Shown here piece by piece: positions 3,475-34,118 of a stretch of 39,249 nt of DNA. Location: NCBI RefSeq assembly GCF_004010195.1, contig NC_057726.1, forward strand, positions 69,177,418 through 69,216,666, read 5' to 3'. The translations under genes and the position numbers were made by a program. The stretch's first letter is position 1. Each line of letters begins with the position of its first letter. This DNA is from Chiloscyllium plagiosum (lineage: Eukaryota). Under the pieces are notes generated by a model, which searched no databases, was not told the DNA's origin, and saw nothing but the letters and a program-made list of their open reading frames with translations.

Positions 3475-3750
3475 TGCCACCAACTCCAGTGAAAATTGTT
3501 CAAATGCCTGCTCCGTCCCTCACTCTCCGCTGCACGACAGCTCCTTTTTTCCCAGAGGAAATTCACGTAATTTGGTATAAAAATGATATCCTGATTACAT
3601 CTGGGATCAACGCCACGAAAGTATGGAAAGAGGGGAGTTTATTTAAAGTCTCCAGCGTTCTCAATCATCTGGAGAGCGGATCGGTTTATATGTGTCAGAT
3701 TTCCCATGTAGCCCTCCAGCTCCCAGCCTGCGTCAGCTACAAGATTCAGG
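3475..3750 (+). CDS. Receptor gene A: Ig C1-set domain exon (phase 1-1)
   Basis: ttcacag|TG...CAGG|gtgaga; VPPTPVKI...LTLRCTTAPFFPEEIHVIWYKND...FKVSS...VYMCQISHVALQLP shows the C1 motifs C-x4-F(Y/F)P, W, and YxCxxxH. Confidence 0.9.
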
Positions 3751-5189
3751 GTGAGAAATGTGAACTTTTAATACTGTTTCCACATTCCGAGTTTGGTGTG
3801 ATGTGCCATTACCTATTTGGGCCATTTTAAAACCATGATAGTGAAACGCGACACTCTCCTTTCATGGCTTTTGGGTTTTTTGGGTTTTTTGAAAACATGT
3901 CATTATATAAACTCAGTGATATGATTCAGAAGGCAGACTATAAATTTCGTAGCTAATGCATTTCGTTCTCATGGCATGAGTTTGCGGCGATGGGACCGCG
4001 ACATTGGGGATTTATTGGACATCAGCATCAGTCTCATTTCATTTCACAGCTCTCGTGGACTTTCTGCGTCCAGAGTGCTGCCTGATTCCAAATGACACAT
4101 GCAAATGTGCAGGTCTAAGATTTGCTGAGGATCAAGTTCAAAAAGATTTTAGTTCGATTTAAATGCGACCGAAAATCGATTTACAGTTGGGAGATTTTCC
4201 AAGGTTTACTTTGACGGTATAATCGAAGTAAACAGGGCGAACGACAAGGATGTATCGGGGTATAAACTAAGCGAGTGTAATGCGGCAAGGAAAACTGGTG
4301 TGATTGCGTTCAGAAAACTAAAAGCCTGCATTCACTGATATGAGACTGTGACAAAATTTAAATACTGGTTTGACAAATACGGTCAAATCAATACAAAAAA
4401 GGTTTTAATTATCTTATAATTGGTAAATAGCCATCTTGGTACTGTAACCATGTCCTGGGGACTTGAGGAAAATCGTAAGAACGCCCACATTAAAAAAAAA
4501 AGCCTCCATAGTTACGGTGATTTCAACATTTAAAATGGATAAGCGTCAGGATATTTTAATGACACAATGAAGAGGCCACACTGTGTACATTTAGCTTATA
4601 TGTACTATCCCATTCCTTTCATTAAAGTCAATTAATTTTGTCCTGTCTGGTTTTGTTCATTAATGTTTGCATCACATCCGGGAAGTTTGCCTGTGCACTA
4701 AAGACGCCCGAGACCTCTAAAAGGAGGCGGGGTTCTGCCTGCTCTGTCTGATGGCCACTGTTTTCAAACGATTTCTCAGCTCTTGATAATGTTTTTGTAA
4801 AATTAATTTTCCGTAATTTGTTCAAACCTATTTAATTAAATTTGACTTATATTTCCTGCACAATGAAACTTCTAAACATGGTGTACAAATACACAACAAA
4901 CCTGGTGGGGGGCAGCAACACAATCACATATGTACCACAAACTTGATTAATATTTGAAAATTATTCTGAATTGATAGTCACGTGTGATTTATTGTCTGTC
5001 AGACGTTGTCAGGCTAAAATTTTCCCAATTAGGCATCGCGGTGGAATATATTATGGAGTGTGTGTTACACCATTCATGACAGAGTGTGTCCAAGTTATTC
5101 TCTTGCCCTTTGATTGTGAATTTGCTTAAGTGTTTAACACCATCTTCTCTGTAAAATGCAAATTGCAGCTTTTGTTTTACATATTCTAG

Positions 5190-5309
5190 GCAACGGCAAC
5201 AATAACTTTCCTTACGTCTTGGTGTCTGGGTGTGCAGTGGGCGGTTTAATAATTTTGTTTCCCGTTGTTGCAATTCTTGTCAAGCGACGGACATCAGGCA
5301 AACCTGAAG
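5190..5309 (+). CDS. Receptor gene A: transmembrane exon (uncharged TM)
   Basis: ttttacatattctag|GC...GAAG|gtaagc, 120 bp, phase 1-1; GNGNNNFPYVLVSGCAVGGLIILFPVVAILV-KRR, a hydrophobic helix with basic stop-transfer residues. Confidence 0.85.
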
Positions 5310-5822
5310 GTAAGCCCTGGCATTACCCTGTTTAGTTGTTTTGTTTGGTCTACTCATTGTTGGATGTTGTCGCACGGACCGTGTAAAGTTCAGACACAGA
5401 TCTAGATATTCAGATCAATGCAGACATCAGGAAAAAAAAAGATTGGCTTCCTGGGCCTCAGAGCTTGAATGCAGGCAATGCCTGAAAAGGAACTTTGCAG
5501 AATAATACGTCCACATCTCCATGTTAAAGTCAACCATAGCTTTGTTCTTTACAATACCTCAAGATGATAATGTGAACGATCTAGATTAATACCCTTAATG
5601 CTGTAACAGGGAAAAGGATCACCGCTGGGTAAGAAAGTGTGAAATGTGTATGACAAAATAATATATCGCACCTTTGACCAAAGCTAATCCGCAATTAGAC
5701 ACTGGTGTTATTTCTTATTGATGTCGAATCTGGTCACTTTAAACCAATATACTTTGGGAGGCTCTTCACACATCAAGTTCATGATAACTTTTATTGTTGA
5801 TATCAGTTTCATTCTCCAATAG

Positions 5823-5866
5823 GAACACAGATTACTGAAGACATACCAGAGCAGCTGGAGCCGCAG
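5823..5866 (+). CDS. Receptor gene A: 44-bp cytoplasmic exon
   Basis: ttctccaatag|GAACAC...CCGCAG|gttagt, phase 1-0, GTQITEDIPEQLEPQ; same length, start (GAACAC) and end (CAG) as 22030-22073. Confidence 0.75.
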
Positions 5867-5904
5867 GTTAGTTTCATTCTCATCCAATCAGACACTGAAA
5901 TATG

Positions 5905-7705: not shown

Positions 7706-8022
7706 GGATTGGGTGCATTGGACCTTGTGCATGATGTTTTTGACTTGTGATAAGCAAATAATAAATGCCCCAAAATTTCTCATCAGATTAGGTATGGGAG
7801 AGAAGTGAACAGCCCTTCCTATGCTGCTCTCAATTTCAGTGAGCACGGGAAATCTGCAAAACCCAGGCATCTGGGAGAGCCAACTATCTATGCCCAGGTA
7901 TGAGTATGCCAAAAAAGGAGTGATCAGGTATAAGTAGCTAATCTCAGCAATGTACATTGACAAAAGTAGAAAAATACATTTGAATAAAGGATGCAACTGA
8001 TCTTTTATTGTTGTTCCCTCAG

Positions 8023-8172
8023 ACTCAACAAAGTGCTGGCATTAAACTGATATATACATCTGTGGAATTCACCAATCCGCAGAAAAGTGAAAAAACCAAC
8101 AAACAGAAAATGGAAATGGAATATGCAAAGATCAAGATAAACAAGCCAAATGGAGAATCCCAGCTCGTATGA
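8023..8172 (+). CDS. Receptor gene A: terminal cytoplasmic exon with ITIM (LIYTSV) and ITIM/ITSM-like motif (MEYAKI)
   Basis: ttgttgttccctcag|ACT, phase 0 matching the previous exon; TQQSAGIKLIYTSVEFTNPQKSEKTNKQKMEMEYAKIKINKPNGESQLV*. Confidence 0.8.
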   Translation, partial: TQQSAGIKLIYTSVEFTNPQKSEKTNKQKMEMEYAKIKINKPNGESQLV

Positions 8173-9199: not shown

Positions 9200-10330
9200 T
9201 ATTAACTAATCTACCATGTAGAACCCTGGTGAAATCCTTGCTAAAAGGTGATGTTTACCACTTTGCCTGCATCTATTGAACATATTCTTGAACATATTTT
9301 CAAACAAATTTGTGAGAAACAGTTTCCCACGCACAAAACAATGCTGACTATCCCTGAAAAGTCTTTGCCGTTCCAAATGCATGTAAATCCTGCCTCTGAG
9401 AATCCCTCCAGCAACTGACCCACCACTGACATTCGGCTCACAGATCTATAGTTCTCTGGCTTTTCTTTGTAGATTTTCCTAAATAATGGCACAACATTAG
9501 TCACCCTTCAGTCTGCCAACATCTCACCTGCAGCTGTTGAAGATACTCGTACCTCTGGTGGGTGTCCCCCAATTGCTTTCCTCGCTTCCGACAATGTCCT
9601 GGCAATTTATCCACCTTTGTGCATTTCAAAACCTTCAGCACCTCCTCTGCTGTAATATGGATGCTTTTCAAGACATCTCTATTTATTTCTCTGAGTTCGC
9701 CAGTTTCCATGTCTTTATCCAGAGCAAATACTGACAGAAAGAATCGACTTAGGATCTCACCCATCTCTAGTGCTTCCACACATAGATGGCCTTGTTGACC
9801 TTTAAGGGGTTCTATTCTCTCCATAATTACTCTTTGCCCTTCAGAGACAGGGAGAATTTTTATCGCATGTGCTTTTTCTGCCCTCCCTTTGAAGTGTACT
9901 GCTACTCCTTCTATGCTCCTCAAGAATTTATTTAATCTCAAATGTTTAAATTTGACATGTACCTCCTTTTCATTGATCAGAGCTTCAGCACTTCATATTT
10001 CCTAGTCCTACTAGCCTTACCATTCACACTTACAGGAACATGCTCAGCCTGAACTCCTGCTATCTCGCTTTTGAATAATTCCCACTAACCAGGCATTCTT
10101 TGACCTGCGCACAGCCTCCACCAATCAACTTTCAAAAATCCCTATCTCATGCAATCAAAATTGGCCTTGTCCCACGTTGGAACTTTAGCTTGTGGACCAG
10201 ACCTATCCTTTTCTGTAACTATTTTAAAACTAAGTAGTATTATGGTGATTGGTTCCAAAATGGTCTCGCACTAACATCTTAGTCACTTGCCGTCCCTTAA
10301 TTCTCAGCAGGAGGTTGAGTTTTGTCCTTC
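9200..10330 (-). mobile_element. CR1 LINE ORF2 internal fragment (degenerate)
   Basis: Minus ORFs contain EMGEILS.FF.SVF, VDKLPG and NVVPLFRK..KEKPENYRSVS (CR1 pre-RT/RT motifs). Confidence 0.85.
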
Positions 10331-10334
10331 TCTG

Positions 10335-10980
10335 AAAAGCAGGACAAAAAAGGAGAGTTAATGATTCGAGCGTAAGTTTTTCATCGCAAATGTGGGTCAG
10401 GGCCCAAGTTGGCTAAGAGATAGAGCAGCGGGGAATGTGGCTTGGAATGTGATAGGGAGATGAAGGCGGGGATGATGGTGATGGGTCAAAGTGGAGGGTG
10501 GAACACATAGGTGGGAAGGAAGATAAACAGGTATGACAATTACAGAGGGTGGTGCTGAGTTGGATGGTGGTATCTAGAATAAGGTGGGGGGAAGGGAGAT
10601 GAACAAACTGGTGGAACAGACATTGATTCTGCCTGGTTGGAGGGTCCCAAGATGAAACATGAGGTGTTCTTCCTCCAGTTGTCTGGTAACTTGGATTTGG
10701 CGGTGGAGGAGGTGCAGGGCTTGGGTATCATTGGTGGAGTCGGAGGGGGAGGGAGAGTTGAAATGGTCACCCACAGGGCAGTGGAGTTGTTTGATGTGCG
10801 TGTTCCGGAGATGTTCTCTCAAATGTTCCGCAAGTTGTCGTCCTGTCTCCCTAATGTACAGGAGACCACATTGAGAGCAATGGACACAGTAGATGATGTG
10901 TTTGGAGGTGCAGGAAAATCTCTGCTGGATGTGGAAGGATCCTTTGGGACCTTGGGTGACAGTGAGGGGGACATTTGTAG
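10335..10980 (-). mobile_element. Penelope-like element 3' fragment (GIY-YIG endonuclease, second family)
   Basis: ORF 10574-10984: FSCTSKHIIYCVHCSQCGLLYIRETGRQLAEHLREH...VGDHFN...LGTLQPGRIN. Confidence 0.85.
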
Positions 10981-12695
10981 GCAAAGGAATGGCTGAAATT
11001 GGGAAGAGATGGGGGAGATACTAAATGAGTATTTTGCATCAGTATTTCCTGTGGAGAAGGATATGGAAGCTAGAGATTGGGGAAATAAAGAACGATAGCT
11101 TGAAAAATGTCTGCATTCCAGAAGAGGAAGTGCTAAACATCATAAAACACATAAAGATGGATATATCCCCAGGACCTGATCAGGTGTATCCGAGGATTTT
11201 GTAGGAAGCTAGTGAAGTGATTGTTAGGCCCCTTGCTGAGATATTTGTACCATCGATAGTCACAGCTGACGTTTCTGAAGACTGGAGGTTGGCTAATGTG
11301 GTGCCACTATTTAAGAAAGTTGATAAGGAAAAGTCAGGGAACTATAGACATGGCAGCCTGATGTCAGTGGTAAGCAAGTTGTTGGAGGGGATCATGAGAG
11401 TCAGCATTTATATGTATTTGGAAAGGCAAGGATTGATTAGGGAGAGTCAACCTGGCTTTGTACTTGGGAAATCATGTCTCACTAATTTGATTGAGGTTTT
11501 TGAGGAGTAATGAAGAAGATTGACGAGGCAGAGCAGTGGACATGATCAATATGCATTTGACAAAGTTCTTCATGCTGAACTGGTTAGCAAGGTTAGGTCA
11601 CATGGAACACAAGGAGAACTAGCCATTTGGATACAGAACAGGCTCAAAGATACGAGACAGAGGGTGGCGGTGGATGGTTGCTTTTTAGATTGGAGTCCTG
11701 TGACCAACAGTGTGTTACAAAGAAAGGTGTTGAGTTCACTGCTTTTCATCATTTATAATAATGATTTAGATGTGAATATAGGAGGAATACTTTGTATGTT
11801 TGCACATGACACCAAAATTGGAGGTGTACTGGACTGTGAAGAAGGTTACCTCAGAGTACAATGGGACCTTGATCAGATGGACCAATGAGCTGAGGCATGG
11901 CTGATGGAGTTTAATGTTAATATATATGAAGTGCTGCATTTTGGGAATCAGGGCAGGATTTATACACTTAATGGTAAAATCCTAGTAAGGTTGCTCACCA
12001 ACTAGTCCTTGGAATGCAGGTTCATAATTCCTTGAAATTGGAGTTACAGGGTAGATAGGATAGTGACGAAGGTGTTTTATATGCTTGCCTTTAATGATCA
12101 TTGCATTGAGTACAGGAATTTATAGGTAATGTTATGGCTGTACAGGTCATTTGTTCGGCCAGTTTTAGAATACTGTGTTCAATTCTGGTCTTCCAGCAAT
12201 ATGAAGGATGATGTGAAACTTGAAAGGTTTCACAAAAGGATGTTGACAGGGTTGGAGTGTTTGAGATATAGGGAGTGGGTGAATAGGCTGAGGCTGTTTT
12301 CCCAGGAGTATCCGAGACTGAGGGGTGACCATTTTGAGGTTTATAAAATCATGGATAGATTGAATAGTCAAGGTCTTCAATCCATGGTAGGGGAGTCCAA
12401 AATTAGAGGGCATAGGTTTACAGCGATAGGGGAAAGATTTGAAAGGGACCTCAGGGACAACATTTTCAAGCAGAGGATGGTCCGTGTATGTCATGTGCTG
12501 CCAGAGGAAGTGATGGAGGCTAGTTCAATTACAGCATTTAAAATACAACTGGTTGGGGATTTGAACAGGAAGAGTTTAGAGGATATGGCCAAATGCCACC
12601 AAATGGGACTAGATTGATTTAGGAAATGTGGTCAGCATAGATGGATTGAACCAAAGGGTCTGTTTCCATGCTGTACAGCTCTATGCCTCTATGAC
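10980..12695 (+). mobile_element. CR1 LINE, 5'-truncated, RT to 3' end
   Basis: DWRLANVVPLFKK, SCLTNL, AFDKVLH, FAHDTK (degenerate FADD), LEYCVQFWS, RLRGD; ends in a ctctatg/ctatgact tail. Confidence 0.9.
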
Positions 12696-13189
12696 TTTGT
12701 ACCTGTTTGTAGCATCTATCACCATGAGGTACCTTATTACAAAGTTAAATTTGAAGCCATTGACCTTGATTCTCAATCTAAGTTGTTTTTGGAGTTTCTT
12801 CTCCATTGTGTGCTTGTCGTTTTAATTGCAGGGGCTTATGTTAATGATATTTCCAAATGGTGGCATCGTTAAAAGACTTTTCGAGTCTCCATGTATTGAT
12901 CAATAAGTACCTTCATCAAGCTACTCACATAACTTATTAAAGAGTTCAGGTAATTTAATAATATCCAAGGTGTTATTAATAATCAGTGTTCAATTTCATT
13001 TCTCAGCATGTATATTCATCCTTCCGAAATATCCTGTGTTAAAGTGTTTAACAATTTTCATTCTGAAATGGCTGACTGGTATGTAGTTACTTGACTGAAA
13101 TTTCTCCAAAAATTACATAATAAATCTACCTGAATATCATTTGATAGCAATCCGATAGATGGAGAAGATGACCGCAATTGAAACCCAGG

Positions 13190-13487: not shown

Positions 13488-14423
13488 TCCTGTTTGGTCT
13501 ATTTGATGCCACTTGCTAGAATACCCTGCTCACAGTCTGTGATTAACCTCCATATAATTTAATTTCCACATTAACCAAACATTCTTCCAATTTAATTTTC
13601 TGCACAGAGGTACTAGTGTGGGGAGCAGCGTTTTCCAGATAGAGAAAGCCAGCAGGCATCTATGCACTTATATATCTTGAACAAAAAGGATAAGACAGAG
13701 GAGACAATGGCACAGTGATGCAGGCTCAGGGACTGACCATGACAGTGTTCAGATTTTAATGTCCATGTCCTTTATTCAAATCTATGCTCAGTAATGGTTA
13801 CCACGAATTGTTGATTGTCACAAATTGACATGATTCTCAAATGGACTTGAGGGAAGGAACTCAATCATCTTTCTCTGGTCTGACCTACACGTATTCAAAC
13901 CAAACAGTGAGTGATTGACTTCTATCCACTTTCAAGAGATATTAGGAATATGCTGCAAATGCTGAGTGCCCAGTGACATCATCAACCTTTTTGCAACTGA
14001 AATAAGAACAAACCCTCATGATTAAAGTATGGCAACGAGTGAATTAAATATTCATATTAAGGCAAATTGGTTTTTTTTCATTCCTAATTGGACATTTTTT
14101 CTTCATGCTGCCACAATAATGTTGAAAATTGGAAGGAAGAATGAAATTGACCAAGTAAGTTCCTGTGAGTTGATGGTTTAAACGTTTTATTTCAGAAATA
14201 TACATGGAGTCCCTGCAGACACGGACCATCTCAGACCTCCAGATAAAGTGAAAGACTTAGGTGACTGCATCAGCACACTTTCAAGGAATGTACCAGACCT
14301 GAACCACAGAGAACAACAGGGAGAGTGCCTCACACCTGATGACCAGATTTTCTTCTCGGATTGTTAGTTGGATTGTCTAATTCGATTGTTAGGTCTTGAA
14401 AACTGTTTTTTTTTGTGCAACAG

Positions 14424-14735
14424 CCTCTCACAATTCTCAGTTGATGGTGAGACAAGATCGAGAGTGCGCTGTCACCAGAGGCGCCTTGGTTAAACTTTAT
14501 TGCATTTTCCCCATCTTTCAAGACAAGAAGCCAGTGAAAGTGCAGTGGTGCAGAGATGGGAGAGATGGGTTCTTGGAGGAAATTTTGGACCACAAGATCC
14601 AGCTTTTTTCCCTCAATTGGGGAGGAGCTGTCTTACAACTGGCGGATATAAGATTGGAGGACGCTGGGGTTTATTACTGCAGAGTGACACACAATGTGGC
14701 TGCAAACGGAACCGGCACCAACCTGGTCGTGTTCG
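14424..14735 (+). CDS. Receptor gene B: single-exon VJ-type Ig V domain (germline-joined J motif)
   Basis: tttttgtgcaacag|CC...TTCG|gtaagg, phase 1-1; VKLYC...VQW...LQL..IRLEDAGVYYC...NGTGTNLVV (J-like GxGTxLxV). Confidence 0.92.
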
Positions 14736-14869
14736 GTAAGGATCAAGGAGAAGGGAAAATACTGCGTTCGTTGTGCAATTGGATTTAAGGCATTAATCGG
14801 AATAATTTTTAAAGTGCGGATCTAATCTACAAAGAAAGAATTTGTAATTTTTTGTTCCGATTTTAACAC

Positions 14870-15969: not shown

Positions 15970-16272
15970 TCCCTCCTACTCCACTCAAACTGGTCAAACT
16001 GCTGGAGGACGGCTCAGCTTTCCCTCTAACTCTTCTTTGCACAACTGCTGAGTTTTACCCAGACAACCTGAATATCACTTGGTACAAAAATGATTCAGAA
16101 ATTGCAACCGGGATGGAACATGTCAAACTGCAGAATTCCATCGGCCTCTATGAGGTTTCCAGCAACCTGACTGAGACAGAACCCGTTCAGAGCGGTACCG
16201 TTTACACTTGTCAAGTGTCTCACATCTCACTGCAGACGCCAATGTCAGCTACATTTTCAATAAATAGGGTAG
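15970..16272 (+). CDS. Receptor gene B: Ig C1-set domain exon
   Basis: ttttgtttag|TC; VPPTPLKL...LTLLCTTAEFYPDNLNITWYKND...LYEVSS...VYTCQVSHISLQTP; roughly 40-45% identical to gene A C1 by hand alignment; 3' end is either 16272 (in phase) or 16268. Confidence 0.9.
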
Positions 16273-17725: not shown

Positions 17726-17727
<2 letters not shown>

Positions 17728-21209: not shown

Positions 21210-21311
21210 ATCATGTCGGGAACAATAACATCTCTTCTCTAACGTTTTTCCGTTGTTTGGGAGTTGGATTGATTTTCCACCTCATCGTTACATGCAAACT
21301 CATACGAATCG
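21210..21311 (+). CDS. Receptor gene B: transmembrane exon containing Arg
   Basis: tcttcacag|AT...ATCG|gtaaga, 102 bp, phase 1-1; DHVGNNNISSLTFFRCLGVGLIFHLIVTCKLIRIG; shares GNNN and CxxxGL with the gene A TM exon. Confidence 0.75.
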
Positions 21312-21751: not shown

Positions 21752-22004
21752 CTGCGAGTTGTGTCCAGATTTTAACCAATCTATATCATGGGATTTGTTC
21801 TTGACGCCGATGCTTTTGGAGCAAGTGCCTGTGATATTATTTGTAACATTTTCATGCGTAGTTGCAACAGAATTAAAGTACATCTGCGAGTTTTAACCAA
21901 TCTATATCATGGGATTTGTTCTTGACGCCGATGCTTTTGGAGCAAGTGCCTGTGATATTATTTGTAACATTTTCATACGTAGTTGCAACAGAATTAATGT
22001 ACAT
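21752..22004. repeat. Tandem duplication (114-bp core, period 121)
   Basis: 21770-21883 vs 21891-22004 differ at 2 positions; ctgcgagtt occurs at 21752 and 21884. Confidence 0.95.
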
Positions 22005-22029: not shown

Positions 22030-22073
22030 GAACACGCAGAAAACTGAAAGAGTGTAATCAGCGCAATGAGCAG
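22030..22073 (+). CDS. Receptor gene B: 44-bp cytoplasmic exon
   Basis: ttctcatttag|GAACAC...GAGCAG|gtaggc, phase 1-0, GTRRKLKECNQRNEQ; paralogue of 5823-5866. Confidence 0.72.
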
Positions 22074-23600: not shown

Positions 23601-25572
23601 ACATTGTCAAAAATTGACACAGATACTGCAAAATGAATTGGCTTATTTTTCGCGCAAAAACAGACAAAATGCTGGCAAATCAACTGCGGAACAATGAATA
23701 GTTACATGAGCAGGAAACGTGATATTTCACAGCCATTTGTTCGCCTCAATTATTGTTACCCAACAAAGCAGAAGCTGCATTTCTGAGTGTCAGACTTCAA
23801 CCCAAATATTGCTGTTTACAGACGAAACACGGAATGACAGAGAATAACAAGGTTTACACAGACTTGGATATCACAGGCTCGGGAAAAACTGGGCGAATGG
23901 CCAAGAAGGAAGTCAATGCAAGTTAAGCTCAGGTGCGGCTGTTTTTTTAAAAATCGAAATAAGGAAAAATAACACGTAATAAAAGTTAATGCAATGTAAA
24001 CTGACATTTCATGTTTGAATATATTGAAGTGCATTAAAACTTGTATCCCAATAAATTAATTATTAGATGATATGATAGCATTTCAAATAGTCATTTTAAG
24101 AAAGAACTCACAAATAGACCTTTTTTTTTGACTGGAGGAATGTCTGTAGCAAGGCCCATTAAGGTCAATGCTTTTACATCCAATGTTTATCAAATAGAAT
24201 AGAGAGATGATAGAACATCGAGAAAGTACAGTTCACTTCAGAAAAGGGTTTATTCAAGCATTTTAGGTGGAAGAATAATGACCGAAGAACACAACTTCAC
24301 ACAAAACTTACAGGTACGCCTGCACTGCAGGTTACCAATTTCCCTGAAATATTGCTCCGGTCGTTACTGTAAAGAATACAGCCAAACGTGCACAGAGCTC
24401 CAGAGTACACCCAAGCTGTGTAAACACCGCAAGAATTCTTTAAACTTCAACAAAATCCATAATAGGAAGAAAGATTATGAACTAAACAGTTTGATTTCGA
24501 AGACTGAATTCAACCCATATCACGTCCAGAACATTAAGAGGTTGTTAATAATACGTTTATAGATCGGGAGAAACAGATATTAAGAAAAAGAAATCAGTTT
24601 CTGAAATCACCAATCATAACTAAATTGTAAAGACATCCGATATTGTACTGCTTGTTTAAAAAAAATCAAGGAATATTGGCGCCATTGGATAAACAACCAA
24701 TTCATCCTACTTCCCGTAGTTATTTCAGGCAACAGCCTTAATATGTTGAATAAATTAGAACGGGCATAAACTGGAACGGACATGTGCAGCCGATTTAAAA
24801 AAAAACCTCTTTGTGGTGTTTCGTTCTCCTCTTGTGTTCAGAATCTGAGCTTTTCCCCATTTGTTCAATTTGGCCCGCGCCCCATCCGTAAGGTGCAGGA
24901 GAAATGACACTTCCTGCGAAAGACGGGATCCCAGATTTCGGCTTCATATTGCGCCAAAGTTGCGTTCTGCATTGCTATTGTTTCTAATGGAAAATTCACT
25001 CTGCAGTGAAAAATGTGTATTGGAAATTCACTTATATGATCTTAAGAAGATTTTGTTTCTCCCAGCCAACAGTAGAAAACACAGAAATCGATACCCTTTA
25101 TATAAAAGTTAGGGTAAAAGGAGATTATGCTATGATGCTTTTGATGATGGAGATAGGACAGAATATACTTTAGTACACGAGTAACCTTCGATCGGATCGC
25201 AAAGATTTCAAATAAGCAGCAGGATGAAATGATTAAATTCTTGATTTTTCCGTCTCTTGATCTGCAATACATTGTTCACAAATTTCGAGAAAGCAGTTAT
25301 AATGGTAATCTTCTAAAGAGACTGTCAATTCCAGGGCAAAATTGCAGTGACTTGGAGAAGGGATAAGTCAGTTGGAGTAATTGGTTGTATTGTCAGAGCA
25401 CCAACATTCTTCATCATTCTTGACTGTGAAAAGATTTCATTGTTTTGGTAGCTTTATCAAAGAAAACATTAACGTCTGTGATACTCTGACCACTTTGAAT
25501 ATAAACCACTTAAACAGATTTTTGAATAGTCGTTTCAAATAGATCCTCATAATAAAAAGTTTTGTTTTTCAG

Positions 25573-26393: not shown

Positions 26394-28135
26394 CTAACTG
26401 TTCTGTGCCTGCAGTTCATACTGCTGAATCTGCCCTCGCATTCGAATCATTACTTCTGTGTGGGCTTCACATTTACACACAGTAATTGATTTGGGCAACA
26501 GGACCGTTTCCAGGAGATCAGAAACCAGGCCACGGCATGTGATGAGCTTTCCGGTAGAGGTTAAGAAGCCCCTGTGTTTCCACAGGGTTCCAAAATCATG
26601 TACAATCTCGAATGCATATCTGCTATCGTTGTAAATATTCACTGTCTTTCCCTTAGCCAATTTACAAGCCTCAGTCAAGGCAATCAGCTCCGCTGCTTGC
26701 GCTGACAGATGAGAAAGGAGTGATCCTGCTTTGACTGCCTCATGGATAGTCTCTACAGCATATTAAACACAGTTCTGGCCTGTCTCCTTGCTCCTGAATG
26801 CTGACCCATCCACAAAAAACTCCATATCCGGATTCTGAAGTGGCGAATCCTGCAAATCCAGTCTGGGGCTGCAAATTTCATTAGTTACAGCGACTCAATC
26901 ATGTGGGTCTCCGTCTCCTTCTGTGGGGAGAAGGCTAGCAGGGCTAAGGATGTTACATCGCTTTATTGCAATATTAGGCATCTCCTATAACACGGTATTG
27001 TATCTCAGCCAACGTGCTGCCGACACGTGTGCTGTCTTTTGCTCGGGAAGCAGTAAGGATACTGCAGAACCGATGATCCCGAGGTTAAAACAGGAGTGTC
27101 CAGACTCCTGCATAGAGACTCATTATGTATGGCGGGGGACTCACAGTAACCTTGACAAATTTGCGTGAAGGTATATGATTTCCCTTTGAATGAAAAAGCG
27201 TACCAGAATTGATTATCTGGTACACTAAAGAAGGCATTTGCTAAATCCACAACAGAGAGCCATTTACTGTCCGGTGGAATTTGAGCTAATATCGAATAGG
27301 GGTTGGGAACATTTGGGGCGCGCTATTGACTGCCTGCAGGTCTTGAACAAACCTCCATTCCTCAGGTTCACCTGGAATGTTTGCTTTTTTGAATGGAAAA
27401 ATGGGGGTTCTCACCAGTAGGTTCTCACAGGGGATTATCACTCAAGCCTTTAGAAGGGATTCAAAGACTGGAGTAATTCTTTCTATAGGATCAGTGGTGC
27501 TGGAAGAGCACAGCAATTCAGGCAGCATCCGAGGACAGGCAAAATCGATGTTTCGGGCAAAAGCCCTTCATCAGGAAGGGCTTTTGCCCGAAACGTCGAT
27601 TTGCCTGTCCTCGGATGCTGCCTGAATTGCTGTGCTCTTCCAGCACCACTGATTCAGAAGAAGGTTTCCAGCATCTGCAGTCAATGTTTTTACACCATTG
27701 TTTTTACCTCTAATTCTTTCTATAGCCTCAGGCTTTAACAGATATCGTGCTCTGCAAGGAGGCGGTAAATCTCTCTCGTACCACGACTGCATCCATTGAG
27801 TTCAGAAAGCTTCCACTCATCTTTATTGGCATCGACTCTCTGAACTGGCTTGATTTAAGGACTAACTATGTAGCTCCTGTATCGACCAAAAAGGTAACTG
27901 GTGTACCTTCCACATATAACATGGAGGTAGGCATCGAATTATATGCATCGTTGTTATATTGGACATATTGCCCACACTTCGCAACCTCAATGCTCAATAT
28001 AGAGGTGGGACATGTCTCAGTGTCCGTAAGGTTAGTAGAAGAGATTAGCATAAGCGAGCCTTCATTGCAAACCATAAAGAAAAGAGGCTTACCTGTACCT
28101 TGTGGGCTGCCCACCTTCACTTCAGCCCTCCCCTG
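26394..28135 (-). pseudogene. pol: ERV pro-pol remnant (protease, RT, RNase H) with stops, frameshifts and deletions
   Basis: FLVDTGAT*; YLLKPEA; DLANAFFSVP...QGYCESP...VLQY (DD absent); FFVDGS; ELIALTEAC; NIYNDSRYAF; KCEAH. Confidence 0.9.
27489..27710. mobile_element. Short palindromic Penelope-type element inserted in ERV pol, with 15-bp TSD
   Basis: TSD taattctttctatag at 27474-27488 and 27711-27725; ~80-bp inverted arms 27490-27569 / 27575-27653; removing it restores LKPEAIERITPVFESLL. Confidence 0.9.
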
Positions 28136-29671
28136 ACAGTCACCCTGCTGTCTAGCCTCCAGAGCCAATTTAGGCTGTCTGTGTGGGCACTGTTTCGCCC
28201 AGTGGTCCATTGCTCCACAAACAAAGCACCCACCAGATCTATCTCTGCCAGCGCCTCTTCCTCTGTCTTTTTTCCACAGCACCTCCCTCCAACGGCTGGG
28301 CGACCATCTGCATCAGAGTAAGCTGAGTTTTATCTGCTTGCTGTTCCATCTTTAGTTACCACTTATCCTTCTCTCGGGTAAGCAATATTTCAGCATGTAT
28401 CGCATGCTGTTCTATCAAATCCAGCTTTCCCGTGTCCCAGGTAATACATGTGTCTTTTACCTTTTTCGCTATTTCGTCTTTCATTCCGTTGATGAAGCTG
28501 TTCCTCAGGTGTGCTTCATATGCCATGATTTCTGCTGCCGTTTTGTCGAAGGGTGGTCTCAGTCCGCTTTGTTTATTATGGACTTCAGTGAGGCGCGTAA
28601 GGTACTGGGACACGGTCTCACCTTCCTGTTGTTTACACATTGCTATTTTTGTCATGTCCATTCGCACTGGGAATGCCTCCCTCCAAGCGGTTGCCAGCGC
28701 TGCAACAAAAGCATTAAAGTCTCTGGTCTGCTCCACTCATGGGTTGGCTACTCTGGCATGGACGTTTGCAGCTGGCCAGGTATAGTTGATTTTGGTGAAA
28801 ACGGCACCTAGTTTTCGTCCCAGGAGACGTCTCATCTTATGTGAAGTGGGACGGAACTCAGTACAGAACTTGGTCACTTATTTGGCGAACTTATGACCTC
28901 CAACCTCGCGTGGGTCAGGCAACTGCCCATAGGCACTTTCCAGATCTTTCATGGTTCATGGTCAGTGCACCAGCACTGGACACCCTTCTGGACCTGCAAC
29001 TTCAGCCATTGGGGCTTGCAGAATCAGCTGGTTAGATGATCGTGCGCCAGTACCCTCGCTGTCTGACTCATCAACCGTCGGGGGGTGATCACGAACCGGC
29101 CCTGGATGCCTTTCCATCTTGTAGTGGTCGTCCTTCTTTTGGGCTTCTTGCTTCAATTGCTTGTGGGTATGGTGTGCTATCGGTGATTCAGCAGACCCTG
29201 AGGCGGCGGCTGCTGACTTGGAACCTTCACCAGGCGGATCTTGTAGGGGGGCTGGCGGTCTCGGAGGGCAGTCATCAATGTCAGGATATGAAACAGACTT
29301 AAGATACTGTACAGCTTTGCGAGGTTGTATTCCGCACACATCTGCATGTGCGCTGGTATTTGTACGTGTACTTGATCTATCTTTTACTTGAGATTTCCTT
29401 TCCCTGATATTAGCCTCAGCCTTCCACAATGTATAAGCACTCCAATTCACAGGTTCTATTTTTCCCTTCTTTTTCTCCTTCTCTCTCTCCTCCAACCTCA
29501 ACCTCAATATTTACTAAAACTTCCTCCCTCTGGAAAACCACATTCCTTGATCGACAATTCTAACTGCTTTACAGGTTCTGGGCCGTAATCATTTAGCATG
29601 TATTGTATTTTTGGTTGGCTATTCCATGTCCTGTGTGGACTCTCCTTTTGTTTGCTCTTGCCGGAGCCCAT
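28136..29671 (-). pseudogene. gag: ERV gag remnant
   Basis: ATG at 29671 gives MGSGKSK (myristoylation-type); GFPEGGSFS; Pro-rich PPRPPAP; capsid; CFVCGAMDHWAKQC knuckle; several frameshifts and stops. Confidence 0.88.
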
Positions 29672-30060
29672 TTTTAGCATAACTGGAAAAGTGTTCAGCT
29701 CTCTTGCTCTCTCTGGCGGTACCATTATCTTTTCCCTTTGACTTGCTTTCTTTCCTCTGGCGGGCCGCCTCAATGCCTTGGTTTTCATAAGCCAAGACAC
29801 CACGTACCCGGTACATCGTTGGTGAGTCCCAACTCAGCCAGTGGTGGTTCCAAGTCTAAAACCACCCTTAAACTTGCTGTCTCCTAAACATTCTAGACAA
29901 GGCAATCCCCTTCCCTTGGGTTTTGCTCTAATCCCACAGCATTGAACCCTTTTCCTGCTGTACTTATTCTCTTAGAATGAGTCTCTATATAGGATTACTA
30001 AACCTTCGACTCTTAATCCAACCCTATTCGATTCGAACTCCAGCGCTAGGGTGATCTGCA

Positions 30061-31237: not shown

Positions 31238-31391
31238 CAGAGGAACCTCGATTATCCAAAGACATGGATGGGGATTATACTGTTCGGTTAGTTGAATTCC
31301 GGACAATCGAATGCTGGATAGCATAGTTTTGCGATCTTGTCAGGTATTCGATATTCAGATAATTGAATGCCAGATAACTGAGGTCCCTCTG
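31238..31391. mobile_element. Tc1/pogo (Tigger)-type MITE
   Basis: TIRs cagaggaacctcgattatc ... gataactgaggtccctctg followed by TA; related copy at 36173. Confidence 0.7.
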
Positions 31392-31392
31392 T

Positions 31393-31874
31393 ACCTCTCC
31401 ATTTCTGCCTCTCTATGTGAATCTTTTTCTGTATTCTCTGTCTTTCAATTTCTATTTCAAATTCACTCTGTCTCTCTCTCTCTGCCTCTATCTGTCTCTC
31501 TCTCTCTCTGTCATATTCATTATTTGTCATATTCTTTCCCAGTTTCTTTGTCATGCTTGCTCAGCTGTGCTGTCTGGGCCCCGCTGTATCTATCTCTTTT
31601 TGCCTGTCTCTGTTTTTGTCTTTCTCTAACTGTCTATGCCCCTCTCTCTTTCTCTTTCTCTGTATTCCATTCTCCCTGTAACTCTGTCTTTTTTTTTGTT
31701 GTCTCTTGTGCTCTCTTTAACTCTCTGTCTTTCACTCTTCACACTCTGGCTTTCACTTTGTTGATCATTACTTCGTGATCTCGAACTCTCCATCGCTCTC
31801 TATTCTGCCGGTCACTCTTGTGCTCTGTCTCTGTGCCTTTCTCCATCTGTCTCTATCTTATTATCTCCCTCTTA
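31393..31874. repeat. CT-rich low-complexity tract
   Basis: Degenerate (TC)n/(TCTG)n running into the gap. Confidence 0.85.
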
Positions 31875-32374
31875 NNNNNNNNNNNNNNNNNNNNNNNNNN
31901 NNNNNNNNNNNNNNNNNNNNNNNNNNNNNNNNNNNNNNNNNNNNNNNNNNNNNNNNNNNNNNNNNNNNNNNNNNNNNNNNNNNNNNNNNNNNNNNNNNNN
32001 NNNNNNNNNNNNNNNNNNNNNNNNNNNNNNNNNNNNNNNNNNNNNNNNNNNNNNNNNNNNNNNNNNNNNNNNNNNNNNNNNNNNNNNNNNNNNNNNNNNN
32101 NNNNNNNNNNNNNNNNNNNNNNNNNNNNNNNNNNNNNNNNNNNNNNNNNNNNNNNNNNNNNNNNNNNNNNNNNNNNNNNNNNNNNNNNNNNNNNNNNNNN
32201 NNNNNNNNNNNNNNNNNNNNNNNNNNNNNNNNNNNNNNNNNNNNNNNNNNNNNNNNNNNNNNNNNNNNNNNNNNNNNNNNNNNNNNNNNNNNNNNNNNNN
32301 NNNNNNNNNNNNNNNNNNNNNNNNNNNNNNNNNNNNNNNNNNNNNNNNNNNNNNNNNNNNNNNNNNNNNNNNNN
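31875..32374. other. Assembly gap (500 N)
   Basis: Run of N; the round size suggests a placeholder length. Confidence 0.99.
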
Positions 32375-33735
32375 GTCATATTTGACCTGGTTTTGGGAAA
32401 TGAGCCTGGCCATATGGGTGAAGCTGTAGTGAGGGAGCGTTTTGACCATAGTGACCATAATATCATGAGCTTTAAGATACTCGTGGAGAGGGATAACAGC
32501 AGTCCTTGTGTAAATGTGTTAAGTTGGGTGAAGAATTGGAGAATTTTGATTGAAGGCAGCTGTTTGAGAGTAAATCTATATCAGACATGAGGAGCATTTC
32601 AAATTGCAGTTGATAAGAGTTCATGAGCGGCACATTTCTGTGACGATAATTGATAGGTCTGGCAGGTTGTGCCAACCTTGGATGAGCAGAGATATTATGA
32701 CCATTGTCAGAAAGAAAAAGGAAGCGTAGGAGGTCAAGGAGAATGGGAACTGACGAAGACCTTGAAGTATGGAAGGAAAGTGGGGAAGAATTTCAACAAG
32801 ACATTAGAGGAAAATGTGTGTCTAACTAGTAAGTTTGCAGATGATATAAAGATTAGTGGAGTTGTGTACAATGAGGAGTATTGTCTGAGGATACAACAGA
32901 ATGTAGATCAATTGGAGGCATGGGCAGAGAAGTGGCAGTGGTGGTTTATTTGGGACTAATGTGAGCTTGAATACAGGTGGAAATTATACAGTGAATGGCA
33001 AGGCCCATCAGAATATTGATACGCAGAGGTGTCTGGTGTGTAGGTCCACAGATCACTGAAGGTGAGAGCGCAGCTAGATAAGGTACTTAAGGTAGTAAAA
33101 AGGGCTTAAGGCATGCTTGACTTCATTGGAAGGGGCATTGAGGATAAGGATAAAGAAGCTATGCTGCAGCTTTATAAAACTACAGTCAGGCCACACTTGG
33201 AATATTGCATATAGTTCTGGTCACCACAATACAAGAAGGAAATGGATGCTTTGGAGAAGGTACAGAAAAGGTTCGCCAGGATGTTGCTTGGTAAGGGGGA
33301 TTTTAGCTATGAAGGAAGGTTGGATAGACTGGGTTTGTTTTCACTGGAAGTTCAGGGCGATCTAATCGAAGTTTATCAGATTGTGAACAGCACGGATAGA
33401 GTAGGAAATATGAGGCTTTTTCACAGGGTGGAGGAATCAAGTACTAGGGGAACAGGTTCAAGAAATGAGGGGGCAAATTTAAAAGCGATGTGTGAGGCAG
33501 TTTTTTTCACATAAGGGGTGGTGATGCCTGGAATGTGTTGCCAGAGGAGGTGGTGGAAGCAGATGGAATAGCAACATTCAAAAAGCACCTGGACAAATAC
33601 ATGAATAAGAAGGGAATATAGGGATACCGTTCCTGTAAGTGAAGGCAATTTTCGTATGGAAAGGAAAAATGTGGCACTACAGGCTGGCAGACACAAAGAG
33701 TCTGTTTCTGTGCTGTATTCTTCTTTGTTCTTCTG
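32375..33735 (+). mobile_element. CR1 LINE with internal deletions (endonuclease end, RT, 3' end)
   Basis: DLVLGNEPG...SDHN (APE end); SKFADDIK; LEKVQKRFARML. Confidence 0.88.
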
Positions 33736-34004
33736 TATCCCTGAGTCATCTGAGCCCCTCAGAGATCATCCTGCCCGCTACGACACAGCTGGTTTGGTCA
33801 GCGTGAACCACCAATCCCAGAGCAGACCTGACTTGATTGGTGATAAGATCTGACTTGGCCAGACGGAATTTTGCTGATTGAAAGGAAGGATGAAATTGCC
33901 CAACTATGTCTCTGAGAGATGTTAGCTTTAATGTGCATGCTACCTCTTACCTGACATTGGTTAATCATTGCTAACATTCCACTTATTCTCCCCTTTTTTG
34001 TTAG

Positions 34005-34118
34005 TGAACAGTGACAGTATTTTGCAAAAGGAATTCTTGACTAGATGTGCTGTAGCAGGATTATTACTTCTCATGTTGGTAACTTTTGTGATACATGACA
34101 AATTAGATCCAATTAAAG
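34005..34118 (+). CDS. Third paralogous transmembrane exon containing Arg (gene C, or alternative exon of gene B)
   Basis: Branch-like gctaac, pyrimidine tract, ttag|TG...AAAG|gtaaga, 114 bp, phase 1-1; VNSDSILQKEFLTRCAVAGLLLLMLVTFVIHDK aligns to gene A SGCAVGGLII. Confidence 0.7.

What the first reader, a model, noticed from the sequence alone, without database searches (positions are those of the whole stretch)
3475..34118. Tandem cluster of non-rearranging VJ-C1 receptors with antigen-receptor-like architecture
Seen: phase-compatible exons give [VJ]-[C1]-[TM]-[44-bp]-[tail] genes, with V and J-like sequence in one exon and no complete RSS. At least two, probably three, diverged paralogues lie head to tail. 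Known: C1-set domains are largely restricted to Ig/TCR/MHC/tapasin/SIRP/B7-H6-type molecules, and germline VJ domains occur in NKp30, SIRP, NITR and PRARP/VJC1-type genes discussed as relatives of the pre-RAG receptor. Inference: an expanded, possibly uncharacterised cartilaginous-fish immune receptor family with TCR/light-chain-like ectodomains.
Basis: partly seen in the sequence, partly recalled or inferred. Interest (0 to 1): 0.85.

Follow-up and report, generated by a model that had tools for sequence, protein, structure and literature searches.

The report
Shark germline VJ-C1 paired receptor genes
This stretch of a shark-like genome holds parts of three neighbouring genes of a large, apparently unstudied cartilaginous-fish family of cell-surface immune receptors whose outer part looks like an antibody light chain but is encoded ready-made, without gene rearrangement.

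Summary
The exons are real. A profile scan of all 1666 six-frame ORFs finds one VJ exon (14424-14735, E 5e-32) and two C1-set exons (3475-3750; 15970-16272). A second scan ranks three family transmembrane exons (5190-5309; 21210-21311; 34005-34118) and three tail exons first.

They form gene 1 (C1-TM-44 bp-two tyrosine-motif tail exons; its V exon is not in the window), gene 2 (complete VJ-C1-TM-44 bp-tail) and a lone TM exon. The third copy is therefore unproven. The N gap (31875-32374) touches no exon.

Colinear RefSeq models from other sharks and rays match both exon chains. The family has 64 proteins at E <= 3e-29, all chondrichthyan, from about 20 species, then a 17-order gap. Automatic names disagree: SIRP-alpha-like, B7-H6-like, tapasin-like, lambda-like.

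By sequence the nearest solved chains are lambda light chain, UrIg2 and SIRP. No RSS flanks the VJ exon.

Gene 1 carries inhibitory motifs. Gene 2 and the lone TM exon carry an Arg at the outer membrane edge, so I read a paired inhibitory/activating system. Gene 2 shows decay-like lesions.

No spliced reads were obtained. Nine full-text searches found no description. First readers of this scan noted the same family in other windows of this genome.

The parts
3475..3750 (+). Gene 1, C1-set exon (phase 1 in, phase 1 out)
   Evidence: Pfam C1-set 5.9e-10. Family C1 profile 1.7e-26. The acceptor cag| and donor |gtgaga were read. In the tree it groups with P0089 (Cetorhinus) and P0102 (Mobula) at 99/92.
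5190..5309 (+). Gene 1, stalk and transmembrane exon; Gly at the position where the other two TM exons have Arg
   Evidence: Hydropathy scan and sequence. Family TM profile E 1.1e-4. tblastn with P0228 gives 60% over 35 aa.
5823..5866 (+). Gene 1, 44-bp cytoplasmic exon (phase 1 in, phase 0 out)
   Evidence: AG/GT-flanked open 44-mer. P0228 matches at 75% over 16 aa.
7787..7897 (+). Gene 1, cytoplasmic exon with a canonical ITIM (S-x-Y-A-A-L) and a T-I-Y-A-Q motif
   Evidence: Sequence. Family tail profile E 1.9e-4. tblastn hits of P0217, P0205, P0228 and P0005.
8023..8172 (+). Gene 1, last coding exon with L-I-Y-T-S-V and M-E-Y-A-K-I motifs; stop TGA at 8170-8172
   Evidence: Sequence. P0228 matches at 56% over 50 aa, E 3e-12. 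Tail profile E 0.019.
14424..14735 (+). Gene 2, single VJ exon (tail of a split leader, V domain and J-like G strand); no RSS
   Evidence: Pfam V-set 4.1e-9. Family V profile 5.4e-32. 81% identical to P0004 and 58% to P0155. RSS scan negative. In the V tree it sits in an 8-row clade at 99/93 that includes Callorhinchus.
15970..16272 (+). Gene 2, C1-set exon. The family-homologous donor at 16272|GT is weak. A stronger-looking donor at 16268|GT would shift the frame.
   Evidence: Pfam C1-set 2.3e-13. Family C1 profile 4.2e-41. 84-86% identical to P0004. Sequence.
21210..21311 (+). Gene 2, stalk and TM exon with Arg at the outer edge and His inside the hydrophobic stretch
   Evidence: Sequence. 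Family TM profile E 2.4e-3. Only phase-1 entry is open.
22030..22073 (+). Gene 2, 44-bp cytoplasmic exon
   Evidence: P0155 matches at 55% over 20 aa.
23822..23926 (+). Gene 2, last exon with one Y-x-x-L motif. A TAA stop stands where the relative P0155 has the Tyr of its last tyrosine motif.
   Evidence: Sequence. P0155 matches at 50% over 40 aa, E 3.5e-6. Tail profile E 3.1e-4.
34005..34118 (+). Lone family TM exon (possible third gene or gene fragment), with Arg at the outer edge of the TM
   Evidence: Sequence. Best hit of the family TM profile, E 4.6e-6 of 1666 ORFs. No V, C1 or tail exon found between 23927 and 39249.
31875..32374 (.). Assembly gap, not part of any exon; left untouched

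Best explanation
The window is a slice of a tandem array of a chondrichthyan-specific multigene family of type I membrane receptors. Each gene has a leader, one germline VJ exon, one C1-set exon, a stalk/TM exon, a 44-bp exon and one or more tail exons.

Shown: the exons, their phases, the fused VJ without RSS, membership of two old lineages of the family, and the family's restriction to cartilaginous fish at the sensitivity used.

Inferred function: the V(J) domain binds a ligand and the C1 domain acts as a stalk. Gene 1 is an inhibitory form whose tail ITIMs would recruit SH2-domain phosphatases, as in SIRP-alpha. The Arg at the outer edge of the TM in gene 2 and in the lone TM exon marks activating-type forms that would pair with an ITAM-bearing adaptor, as in NKp30, SIRP-beta and FcR-gamma-coupled receptors. 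The array evolves by birth and death among retroelements.

Gene 2 descends from an ITIM-bearing lineage. Here it has lost the first ITIM exon, has a stop at its last tyrosine codon, has a weak C1 donor beside a frame-breaking one, and has an Arg/His-containing TM. It is either being converted to an activating or soluble form, or it is a decaying pseudogene.
For: Exons and domains.

Colinear matches of RefSeq models. P0228 (white shark) matches gene 1 in five successive exons: C1 52%, TM 60%, 44-bp 75%, tail 44%, last exon 56%. P0155 (horn shark) matches gene 2 in VJ, C1, the 44-bp exon and the last exon.

Family extent.

Old lineages. Gene 2's V sits in a 99/93 clade with shark, ray and chimaera members. 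Gene 2's C1 pairs with the shark P0004 (100/98), inside a less well supported group (92/79) that also holds ray and chimaera members. Gene 1's C1 groups with Cetorhinus and Mobula at 99/92.

Tail classes. Among 63 family proteins with distinct TMs (96 examined, 28 without a TM), 29 carry ITIM-like motifs. All 13 of 13 with Arg at the TM edge have tails of 33 aa or less, against 4 of 50 others.

All 23 (near-)invariant family residues of V and C1 are kept in gene 2 (read by eye).

No RSS.

Fold. An AF2 model of relative P0155 gives V and C1 at pLDDT above 90. The C1 domain matches MHC II, Ig C and IgNAR C at Z about 14 and rmsd 1.3-2.2.
Against: No RNA evidence. There is no joint at any exon border in 4 runs, and two contigs read through the VJ donor.

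No leader exon was found for gene 2, and no V exon for gene 1 in the window.

Gene 2's lesions fit a pseudogene as well as a functional switch.

Gene 1's C1 has Ser at a Gly that is invariant in 44 relatives and a long terminal branch of 0.72.

Over all classes, an Arg or Lys in or near the TM and ITIM absence are not significantly associated (Fisher p 0.17). The 13/13 count is not phylogenetically independent.

Function, ligand, expressing cells and adaptor pairing are untested.
Confidence: 0.7

Rival explanations
1. The copies in this window are dead relics: gene fragments and pseudogenes left by birth-and-death turnover in a retroelement-rich part of the array. Only relatives elsewhere would be functional.
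For: Gene 1 lacks a V exon in the window, and 3.4 kb upstream is empty by profile search. Gene 2 has a premature stop at a conserved Tyr codon, a missing ITIM exon, a LINE fragment in the tail intron at 22.8-23.4 kb, a competing out-of-phase donor, a Trp-to-Cys change in the conserved WW pair, and no leader found. The third copy is a lone TM exon next to an LTR element and a gap. No identical protein model was returned by the searches, although relatives from about 20 species were.
Against: All eleven exons are open with canonical AG/GT borders and compatible phases. Gene 2's V and C1 keep every (near-)invariant family residue. Gene 1's V exon may simply lie beyond the window start. RefSeq relatives include soluble and short-tail isoforms, so truncated tails need not mean death.
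Confidence: 0.35
2. The genes are shark homologues of B7-H6 (NCR3LG1). They would then be ligands of NKp30-type receptors rather than receptors, and possibly already reported as shark B7H6.
For: RefSeq names many members 'NCR3 ligand 1-like'. The AF2 model of P0155 has B7-H6 (4zso_E) as joint best structural match: Z 16.8, rmsd 3.8, 191 aligned, 25% identity. For the type-B member P0161, three B7-H6 chains rank 3rd, 4th and 8th of 177,635 PDB sequences (6.6e-14 to 1.2e-12). B7-H6 also has V + C1 + TM + a tail with tyrosine motifs (my recollection).
Against: B7-H6 is absent from the best 60 PDB sequences for the window's V exon, both C1 exons, the family profile, and the relatives of gene 1 (P0089) and gene 2 (P0155). 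There lambda chain, UrIg2 and SIRP rank higher. The structural Z values of the top 10 are tied within about 1.5. The V domain carries a J-like GxGT-L-V strand. ITIM and Arg-TM pairs are typical of receptors.
Confidence: 0.15
3. [quoted passage not shown]
For: SIRP-alpha d1-d2 aligns over the whole V-C1 of the family profile (2wng, 1.9e-29) and ranks 2nd for P0161 (5.9e-15). Many RefSeq names are 'SIRP-alpha-like'. Tails carry SIRP-like tyrosine motifs. PRARP is described, as I recall from the abstract of Fu et al. 2019, as V(J)-C1 with an ITIM in fish, amphibians and reptiles.
Against: SIRPs have two C1 domains after V, and these genes have one. No bony-vertebrate V-C1 protein appears among the small proteins (under 450 aa) of the best 150 hits of the exhaustive search. 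The named ones are chondrichthyan except a lungfish triple-V 'SIRP-beta-2-like', a frog 'titin-like' and a turtle 'pIgR-like'. The profile search falls from 3e-29 to 6e-12 outside Chondrichthyes.
Confidence: 0.15
4. The genes are germline-joined immunoglobulin light-chain genes, or UrIg/UrIg2 copies.
For: Lambda light chain and UrIg2 are the top PDB sequence matches. All 50 listed Foldseek matches (ranks 1-50, with gaps) are chains of antibody Fab entries, apparently light chains. Some RefSeq names are 'lambda-1 light chain-like'. Shark lambda genes are germline-joined (PMC12227049, Discussion section read).
Against: Identity to these is only about 20-26%. Family members have TM exons and signalling tails. 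The J-like strand lacks the Phe of FGxG. UrIg has three C domains and is secreted, and UrIg2 has nine to eleven C domains and is single-copy (PMC12227049, sections read), whereas this family has one C1 and dozens of copies.
Confidence: 0.03

Closest known systems
Uncharacterised RefSeq/UniProt gene models of other cartilaginous fish. For gene 2: P0004 (Chiloscyllium punctatum, partial), P0155 (Heterodontus francisci), P0005 (Heptranchias perlo). For gene 1: P0228 (Carcharodon carcharias), P0205/P0217 (H. francisci), P0227 (C. plagiosum), P0089 (Cetorhinus maximus).
   Same: They share the exon chain, the V(J)-C1-TM-44-bp-tail architecture, conserved motifs, and ITIM-type tails or Arg-TM short tails. 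Gene 2 is 81-86% identical to P0004. Gene 1 is 52-75% identical, exon by exon, to P0228.
   Different: None is identical, and no model of this genome was returned. Gene 2 here lacks the first ITIM exon and ends early. These models carry only automatic, conflicting names.
SIRP family (SIRP-alpha, -beta, -gamma)
   Same: A germline V with a J-like strand is followed by C1-set domain(s). There are paired ITIM-tail and charged-TM forms. SIRP ranks among the best PDB sequence matches.
   Different: This family has one C1 domain instead of two. No orthology is shown. The family is confined to cartilaginous fish at the sensitivity used.
UrIg / UrIg2 (Flajnik et al., Sci Adv 2025, PMC12227049; abstract, Introduction, one Results section and the first of two parts of the Discussion read)
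   Same: Both are elasmobranch, non-rearranging, with a single-exon VJ followed by C1-type domains. UrIg2 is the best PDB match of gene 2's C1 exon (1.9e-16) and of P0089 (3.8e-18).
   Different: UrIg has 3 C domains and is secreted. UrIg2 has 9-11 C domains and an IgM-like TM. Both are single genes linked to the MHC or the antigen-receptor complex. This family has one C1, signalling tails and dozens of tandem copies.
NKp30 (NCR3) and its ligand B7-H6 (NCR3LG1)
   Same: NKp30 is a VJ-type V with an Arg in the TM (recalled). The V-only isoform of a sawfish family member is auto-named 'NCR3-like'. B7-H6 is V + C1-like + TM + a tail with tyrosine motifs, and is the joint best structural match.
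   Different: NKp30 has no C1 domain. B7-H6 is outside the best 60 PDB matches for 6 of 7 queries. Neither is a multigene paired family in mammals.
PRARP (Fu et al. 2019, J Immunol; not held, recalled from the abstract and cited in PMC10751288)
   Same: It is a non-rearranging VJ with a C1 domain, TM and ITIM, discussed as a relic of the antigen-receptor precursor.
   Different: It was described from bony vertebrates. No sequence was available here, so the relationship is untested.

Membership tests
Chondrichthyan V(J)-C1 receptor family (unnamed; RefSeq models) | V domain with the family core motifs, matching the family V profile | tested here: met
   Profile built without the window rows: E 5.4e-32. 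In the V tree it sits in a 99/93 clade.
Chondrichthyan V(J)-C1 receptor family (unnamed; RefSeq models) | A single C1-set domain directly after V, with the PPTP start and the Y-x-C-x-V-x-H end | tested here: met
   Both C1 exons: E 4.2e-41 and 1.7e-26. Tree clades at 100/98 and 99/92.
Chondrichthyan V(J)-C1 receptor family (unnamed; RefSeq models) | Colinear TM, 44-bp and tail exons | tested here: met
   TM and tail profiles rank the predicted exons first. P0228 and P0155 match colinearly.
Non-rearranging VJ genes | V and J in one exon, with no RSS | tested here: met
   The J-like strand ends 3 codons before the donor. The RSS scan is negative around 14300-14900.
SIRP | V followed by two C1-set domains | tested here: not met
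   There is one C1 exon per gene in the window and in the relatives inspected.
SIRP | Orthology or monophyly with tetrapod SIRPs | not tested
   No SIRP sequences could be brought into a tree. Only PDB scores are available.
UrIg / UrIg2 | Three or more C1-type domains; a single-copy gene | tested here: not met
   This family has one C1 and many paralogues per genome. UrIg features are taken from PMC12227049 (sections read).
B7-H6 (NCR3LG1) | Closest sequence relative among solved V-C proteins | tested here: inconclusive
   It ranks 3rd, 4th and 8th for the type-B member P0161. It is outside the best 60 for the other 6 queries. It is the joint top structural match.
NKp30 (NCR3) | V(J) domain joined to the TM without a C domain | tested here: not met
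   A C1 exon follows the VJ exon. NKp30 chains are not among the best 60 PDB matches of the V exon.
PRARP | Sequence relationship to chicken, reptile or fish PRARP | not testable with these tools
   No PRARP sequence was returned by any tool, and the paper is not held.
Paired inhibitory/activating receptors (functional class) | ITIM-bearing tails in some members; a charged TM residue with a short tail in others | tested here: met
   Gene 1 has S-x-Y-x-x-L and L-x-Y-x-x-V motifs. Arg stands at the TM edge in gene 2 and the lone exon. In the family, 13 of 13 Arg-edge proteins have tails of 33 aa or less, against 4 of 50 others. Signalling itself is untested.
Expressed gene | Spliced reads across predicted junctions | tested here: inconclusive
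   No joints appeared at exon borders in 4 runs. One RNA run laid 0 reads. The 'RNA' status of three runs is a guess.

The most novel reading that the evidence does not exclude
This family is the long-missing paired (inhibitory/activating) innate receptor system of cartilaginous fish, spread over megabases of one chromosome. Its germline VJ-C1 module is a surviving side branch of the stock that gave rise to rearranging antigen receptors. It joins an NKp30-like V(J) to a light-chain/UrIg/B7-H6-like C1, so NKp30 (by loss of C1) and perhaps B7-H6 could derive from such genes. Gene 2 would then be a snapshot of an inhibitory gene turning into an Arg-TM activating one.
Probability: 0.25. Interest if true: 0.8.

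Novelty: new variant of a known kind. Interest (0 to 1): 0.58.

Why it matters
Non-rearranging VJ-C1 genes are sought as relics of the gene that the RAG transposon split to create antibodies and T-cell receptors. Recent work singles out two such shark genes, UrIg and UrIg2.

A separate, greatly expanded VJ-C1 family is present in sharks, rays and a chimaera. It has inhibitory-motif and charged-TM forms. This would add a third branch to that picture.

It would also give cartilaginous fish a candidate counterpart of the KIR/LILR/SIRP/NITR-type paired receptors, which I do not know to have been defined for them (my recollection; no paper found).

The conflicting automatic names matter too. SIRP-alpha-like, B7-H6-like, tapasin-like, lambda-like, CD276 and MHC-like labels would mislead comparative analyses.

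The window itself is only a modest slice: one partial gene, one probably altered gene and one lone exon.

Tried and rejected
1. A V exon for gene 1 in bases 1-3474. tblastn and the profile scan found none. A weak frame-continuous P0137 alignment from 3231 rests on a short YxC-like stretch with no J, so I rejected it as chance.

2. More V or C1 copies for a third gene. None appears in 1666 ORFs. A minus-strand hit at 21743-21892 (E 0.012) lies in a 121-bp tandem duplication and is probably chance.

3. Leader exons. ATG/hydrophobic/phase-1 donor scans and a signal-peptide profile (best E 0.27) gave nothing credible.

4. A DNA-level dot plot between the two gene regions showed only LINE fragments.

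5. RNA support. One read-laying run on 14400-20399 with X18, X19, X20 and X22 was inconclusive. It covered neither gene 2's TM exon (21210) nor gene 1.

6. Word-based search with the VJ ORF returned only P0004, from 9 candidates. NCBIfam gave no hits, as expected for a bacterial library. The ESM Atlas gave only generic IgSF clusters.

7. An association of any Arg or Lys in or near the TM with absence of an ITIM over all classes is not significant (p 0.17). Only the narrower Arg-at-edge versus tail-length count is strong, and it is not phylogenetically independent.

9. Papers. Full-text searches found no description of this family. Supplements were not consulted, and the supplementary tables of PMC12227049 and PMC10751288 might list such genes.

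Full report
**What is in the sequence**

The window has 39,249 bases and one run of N at 31875-32374. On the + strand, Pfam recognises one V-set ORF and two C1-set ORFs (4.1e-9, 5.9e-10, 2.3e-13).

I built profiles from relatives, with the window rows left out. Against all 1666 six-frame stop-to-stop ORFs of 15 aa or more, exactly one ORF hits the V profile (5.4e-32). Two hit the C1 profile (4.2e-41, 1.7e-26). The next best hits are E 0.012 and 0.2.

For TM these are 33965-34126 (4.6e-6), 5138-5332 (1.1e-4) and 21173-21328 (2.4e-3). For the tail they are 7754-7900 (1.9e-4), 23723-23923 (3.1e-4) and 7984-8169 (0.019). This is far beyond chance.

**Gene models, from reading splice sites**

- Gene 1: C1 3475-3750, TM 5190-5309, 44-bp exon 5823-5866, tail exon 7787-7897, last exon 8023-8172.
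- Gene 2: VJ 14424-14735, C1 15970-16272, TM 21210-21311, 44-bp exon 22030-22073, last exon 23822-23926.
- A lone TM exon lies at 34005-34118.

All borders are AG/GT and the phases fit, with one reservation. Gene 2's C1 exon reaches the TM exon in frame only through a weak donor at 16272. That donor is at the position homologous to the relatives. A stronger-looking donor four bases upstream would break the frame.

**The gap, tested first**

The gap's left flank is CT-rich low-complexity sequence and its right flank is a LINE-like ORF. No IgSF exon abuts it and none of my models crosses it. It lies between gene 2's stop and the lone TM exon. Whether V and C1 exons of a third gene are hidden there is unknowable from this window. 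I did not try to fill it.

**Non-rearranging VJ**

The V exon runs through a J-like G strand. This fits FGxGTxLxV at 8 of 9 positions, with Asn for Phe, and the exon ends three codons later at the donor. A heptamer/spacer/nonamer scan found nothing in 14300-14900. The one exact heptamer near an exon (3470) is simply the C1 acceptor, with a poor nonamer.

**Relatives**

An exhaustive HMMER search of 1.84 billion representatives with the VJ exon gave 397 hits at E <= 0.001. The top of the list is inflated by giant multi-Ig proteins. The small single-stretch hits are V-C1 proteins.

I looked up the source names of 30 hits. The V-C1 ones are all from sharks, rays or Callorhinchus. The non-chondrichthyan small hits are a lungfish triple-V 'SIRP-beta-2-like', a frog 'titin-like' and a turtle 'pIgR-like' protein.

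Profile searches gave 41 and then 71 proteins. In one search, 64 of 71 are chondrichthyan, all at E <= 3.4e-29. The next hit is a turtle MHC class II beta-like protein at 5.8e-12, matching the C1 part only. This search sees only candidates that share 5-residue words, so distant kin can be missed.

About 20 species are represented. Many paralogues sit on one chromosome-scale contig per species. The source names are automatic and contradictory: SIRP-alpha-like, SIRP-beta-like, NCR3 ligand 1-like, NCR3-like (for a V-only isoform), tapasin(-related)-like, lambda-1 light chain-like, CD276 homolog, and class I or class II antigen-like.

**Support for the exon chains**

- P0228 (white shark) matches gene 1 colinearly in C1 (52%), TM (60%), the 44-bp exon (75%), the first tail exon (44%) and the last exon (56%, E 3e-12).
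- P0155 (horn shark) matches gene 2 in VJ (58%), C1, the 44-bp exon (55%) and the last exon (50%, E 3.5e-6).
- P0004 (Chiloscyllium punctatum, partial) is 81% identical in V and 84-86% in C1.
- P0217 is an isoform that skips the TM exon. This fits the phase-1/phase-1 design.

It holds through homology to gene models of other species, not through RNA of this one.

**RNA**

The single run search found DNA holders, three runs guessed to be RNA, and two single-cell RNA runs. Laying four runs on 14400-20399 gave no joint at an exon border. One contig covers 14530-14741 and another 14598-14748, running 6 and 13 bases into the intron. A third lies inside the C1 exon with 8 differences. The raw-read RNA run, of which about 6% was read, laid nothing. 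This neither shows nor excludes expression.

**Lineages**

In maximum-likelihood trees (51 C1 rows, 45 V rows; isoforms and fragments with fewer than 60 filled columns were left out), the results are as follows.

- Gene 2's C1 pairs with P0004 (100/98). It lies with horn shark, sevengill shark and a ray clade in a group supported at 94/89, and the chimaera P0014 joins one node further out (92/79).
- Gene 2's V lies in an 8-row clade (99/93) that includes a chimaera protein.
- Gene 1's C1 groups with Cetorhinus and Mobula proteins (99/92).

The two neighbours therefore belong to lineages older than the shark-ray split. This explains their 43% identity.

**What it resembles**

By sequence against the PDB:

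- A lambda light chain ranks first for gene 1's C1, for the family profile and for relatives P0161 and P0155.
- UrIg2 ranks first for gene 2's C1 and for P0089.
- SIRP-alpha or SIRP-gamma appear in the best 60 for five of seven queries.
- B7-H6 appears only for the type-B member P0161, at ranks 3, 4 and 8.

An AlphaFold2 model of P0155, built with a 44-row alignment, has pLDDT above 90 in both domains and a helical TM.

- Foldseek's 50 listed matches (ranks 1-50, with gaps) are all chains of antibody Fab entries, apparently light chains: E about 5e-16, 20-26% identity, rmsd about 9.
- The rigid-body search over 48,161 representatives puts extended V-C proteins first. These include a checkpoint protein and B7-H6, both at Z 16.8, followed by Rst, Neph1, B7-H3 and butyrophilin, which are tied within about 1.
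- In that search the C1 domain alone matches MHC class II, Ig C, IgNAR C and TCR C at Z about 14 and rmsd 1.3-2.6.

So the domains are antigen-receptor-like in type: a V with J, and a true C1. The predicted inter-domain geometry is B7-like. The family is roughly equidistant from light chains, UrIg2, SIRP and B7-H6. I do not file it under any of them.

**How it probably works (inference)**

Gene 1's tail has S-x-Y-A-A-L and L-I-Y-T-S-V, both canonical ITIMs. It also has T-I-Y-A-Q and M-E-Y-A-K-I motifs, like its relatives.

Its TM has Gly where gene 2 and the lone TM exon have Arg, just at the outer edge of the hydrophobic core.

I examined 96 family proteins. Of these, 28 have no TM and 63 have distinct TMs, with isoforms sharing a TM dropped. 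Among the 63, 29 carry ITIM-like motifs. A conserved subgroup has a Cys/Lys-rich tail without tyrosines. All 13 of 13 with Arg at positions -2 to +3 of the core have tails of 33 aa or less, against 4 of 50 others. Relatives share labels, so this count is descriptive.

That is the pattern of paired inhibitory and activating receptors such as SIRP-alpha/beta, KIR and LILR (established knowledge). An outer-leaflet Arg is typical of FcR-gamma- or CD3-zeta-coupled receptors such as NKp30 and NKp46 (recalled).

Gene 2 belongs to an ITIM-bearing lineage but differs from it here:

- It lacks the exon with the first ITIM.
- It has a LINE fragment in that intron.
- It keeps one non-canonical Y-x-x-L.
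- It ends at a TAA where P0155 has the Tyr of its last motif.
- It has Arg and His in its TM.

It is either a gene in transition or a pseudogene.

**Context**

The genes are embedded in degenerate LINE fragments and an LTR element on the minus strand.

Unchecked first-reader notes of this scan list similar VJ-C1 clusters on the same piece, from 7.66 Mb before to 0.75 Mb beyond this window, and on other pieces. The scan has thus met this family before on other DNA. I did not test those notes.

**Literature**

Nine full-text searches found no description of this family.

For PMC12227049 I read the abstract, the Introduction, the UrIg2 Results section and the first of two parts of the Discussion. 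It treats UrIg and UrIg2 as the non-rearranging antigen-receptor genes kept in elasmobranchs and mentions NCR3 as the other MHC-linked VJ gene. The parts I read say nothing of a V-C1-TM multigene family.

For PMC10751288 and PMC11599192 I saw passages only. They list NKp30, PRARP, SIRP, NITR, CD8 and CD79 as VJ-type genes.

The papers most likely to have touched these genes are not held: Flajnik et al. 2012 on B7H6/NKp30, Ohta and Flajnik 2015, Flajnik et al. 2023 on UrIg, and Fu et al. 2019 on PRARP. What I say of them is recalled. Supplements were closed.

**Verdict**

The family is a new variant of the known kind 'germline VJ-C1 IgSF receptors'. It is present in databases only as inconsistently named automatic models. 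This window alone adds a partial inhibitory gene, an altered neighbour and a lone exon.

Noticed in passing
window 21770-22004: There is a 121-bp tandem duplication (1.9 copies, 98% match) inside gene 2's TM/44-bp intron. Its minus strand gives a weak hit to the family V profile (E 0.012 of 1666 ORFs), which is probably chance.
   Followed up: partly
window 26394-29803 (- strand): A degenerate LTR-type retroelement lies here. It has ORFs with RNase H (2.7e-7) and a gag zinc knuckle (3.5e-5), between gene 2 and the gap.
   Followed up: partly
window 9200-12700, 22800-23400, 32375-33500, 34430-35300, 35775-36155 (-), 37250-38000: Repeated LINE-like ORF fragments occur at these places. They include a weak RVT_1 hit and shared C-terminal motifs, and one pair is 72% identical over 840 bases (11884-12695 vs 34489-35284). 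One fragment sits in gene 2's tail intron, where relatives have an ITIM exon.
   Followed up: partly
window 2047-2337: This ORF matches the C-terminal 55 residues of the RefSeq model P0117 (Scyliorhinus canicula) at E 4.8e-6. It looks like an interspersed repeat that was read into that gene model's last exon.
   Followed up: no
window 3470-3476: An exact RSS-like heptamer CACAGTG straddles the acceptor of gene 1's C1 exon. The nonamer at spacer 23 has 3 mismatches, so I take it for chance.
   Followed up: yes
window 31300-31874: CT-rich low-complexity sequence, including a (CT)22 run at 31466-31509, leads up to the assembly gap. It may be why the assembly broke there.
   Followed up: no
proteins P0067 / P0237 (Pristis pectinata), outside the window: Two isoforms of one sawfish family gene carry opposite automatic names. 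The V-only isoform is called 'NCR3 (NKp30)-like' and the full V-C1-TM isoform 'SIRP-alpha-like'. A conserved subgroup with a PWWIY-type TM and a Cys/Lys-rich tail looks like a one-to-one orthologue set across species.
   Followed up: partly
window 14500-14560 and 14450-14470: Gene 2's V domain has two extra cysteines. One replaces the second Trp of the family's conserved WW pair, and one lies before the first strand. Neither is present in its closest relative P0004, where that part is covered.
   Followed up: no
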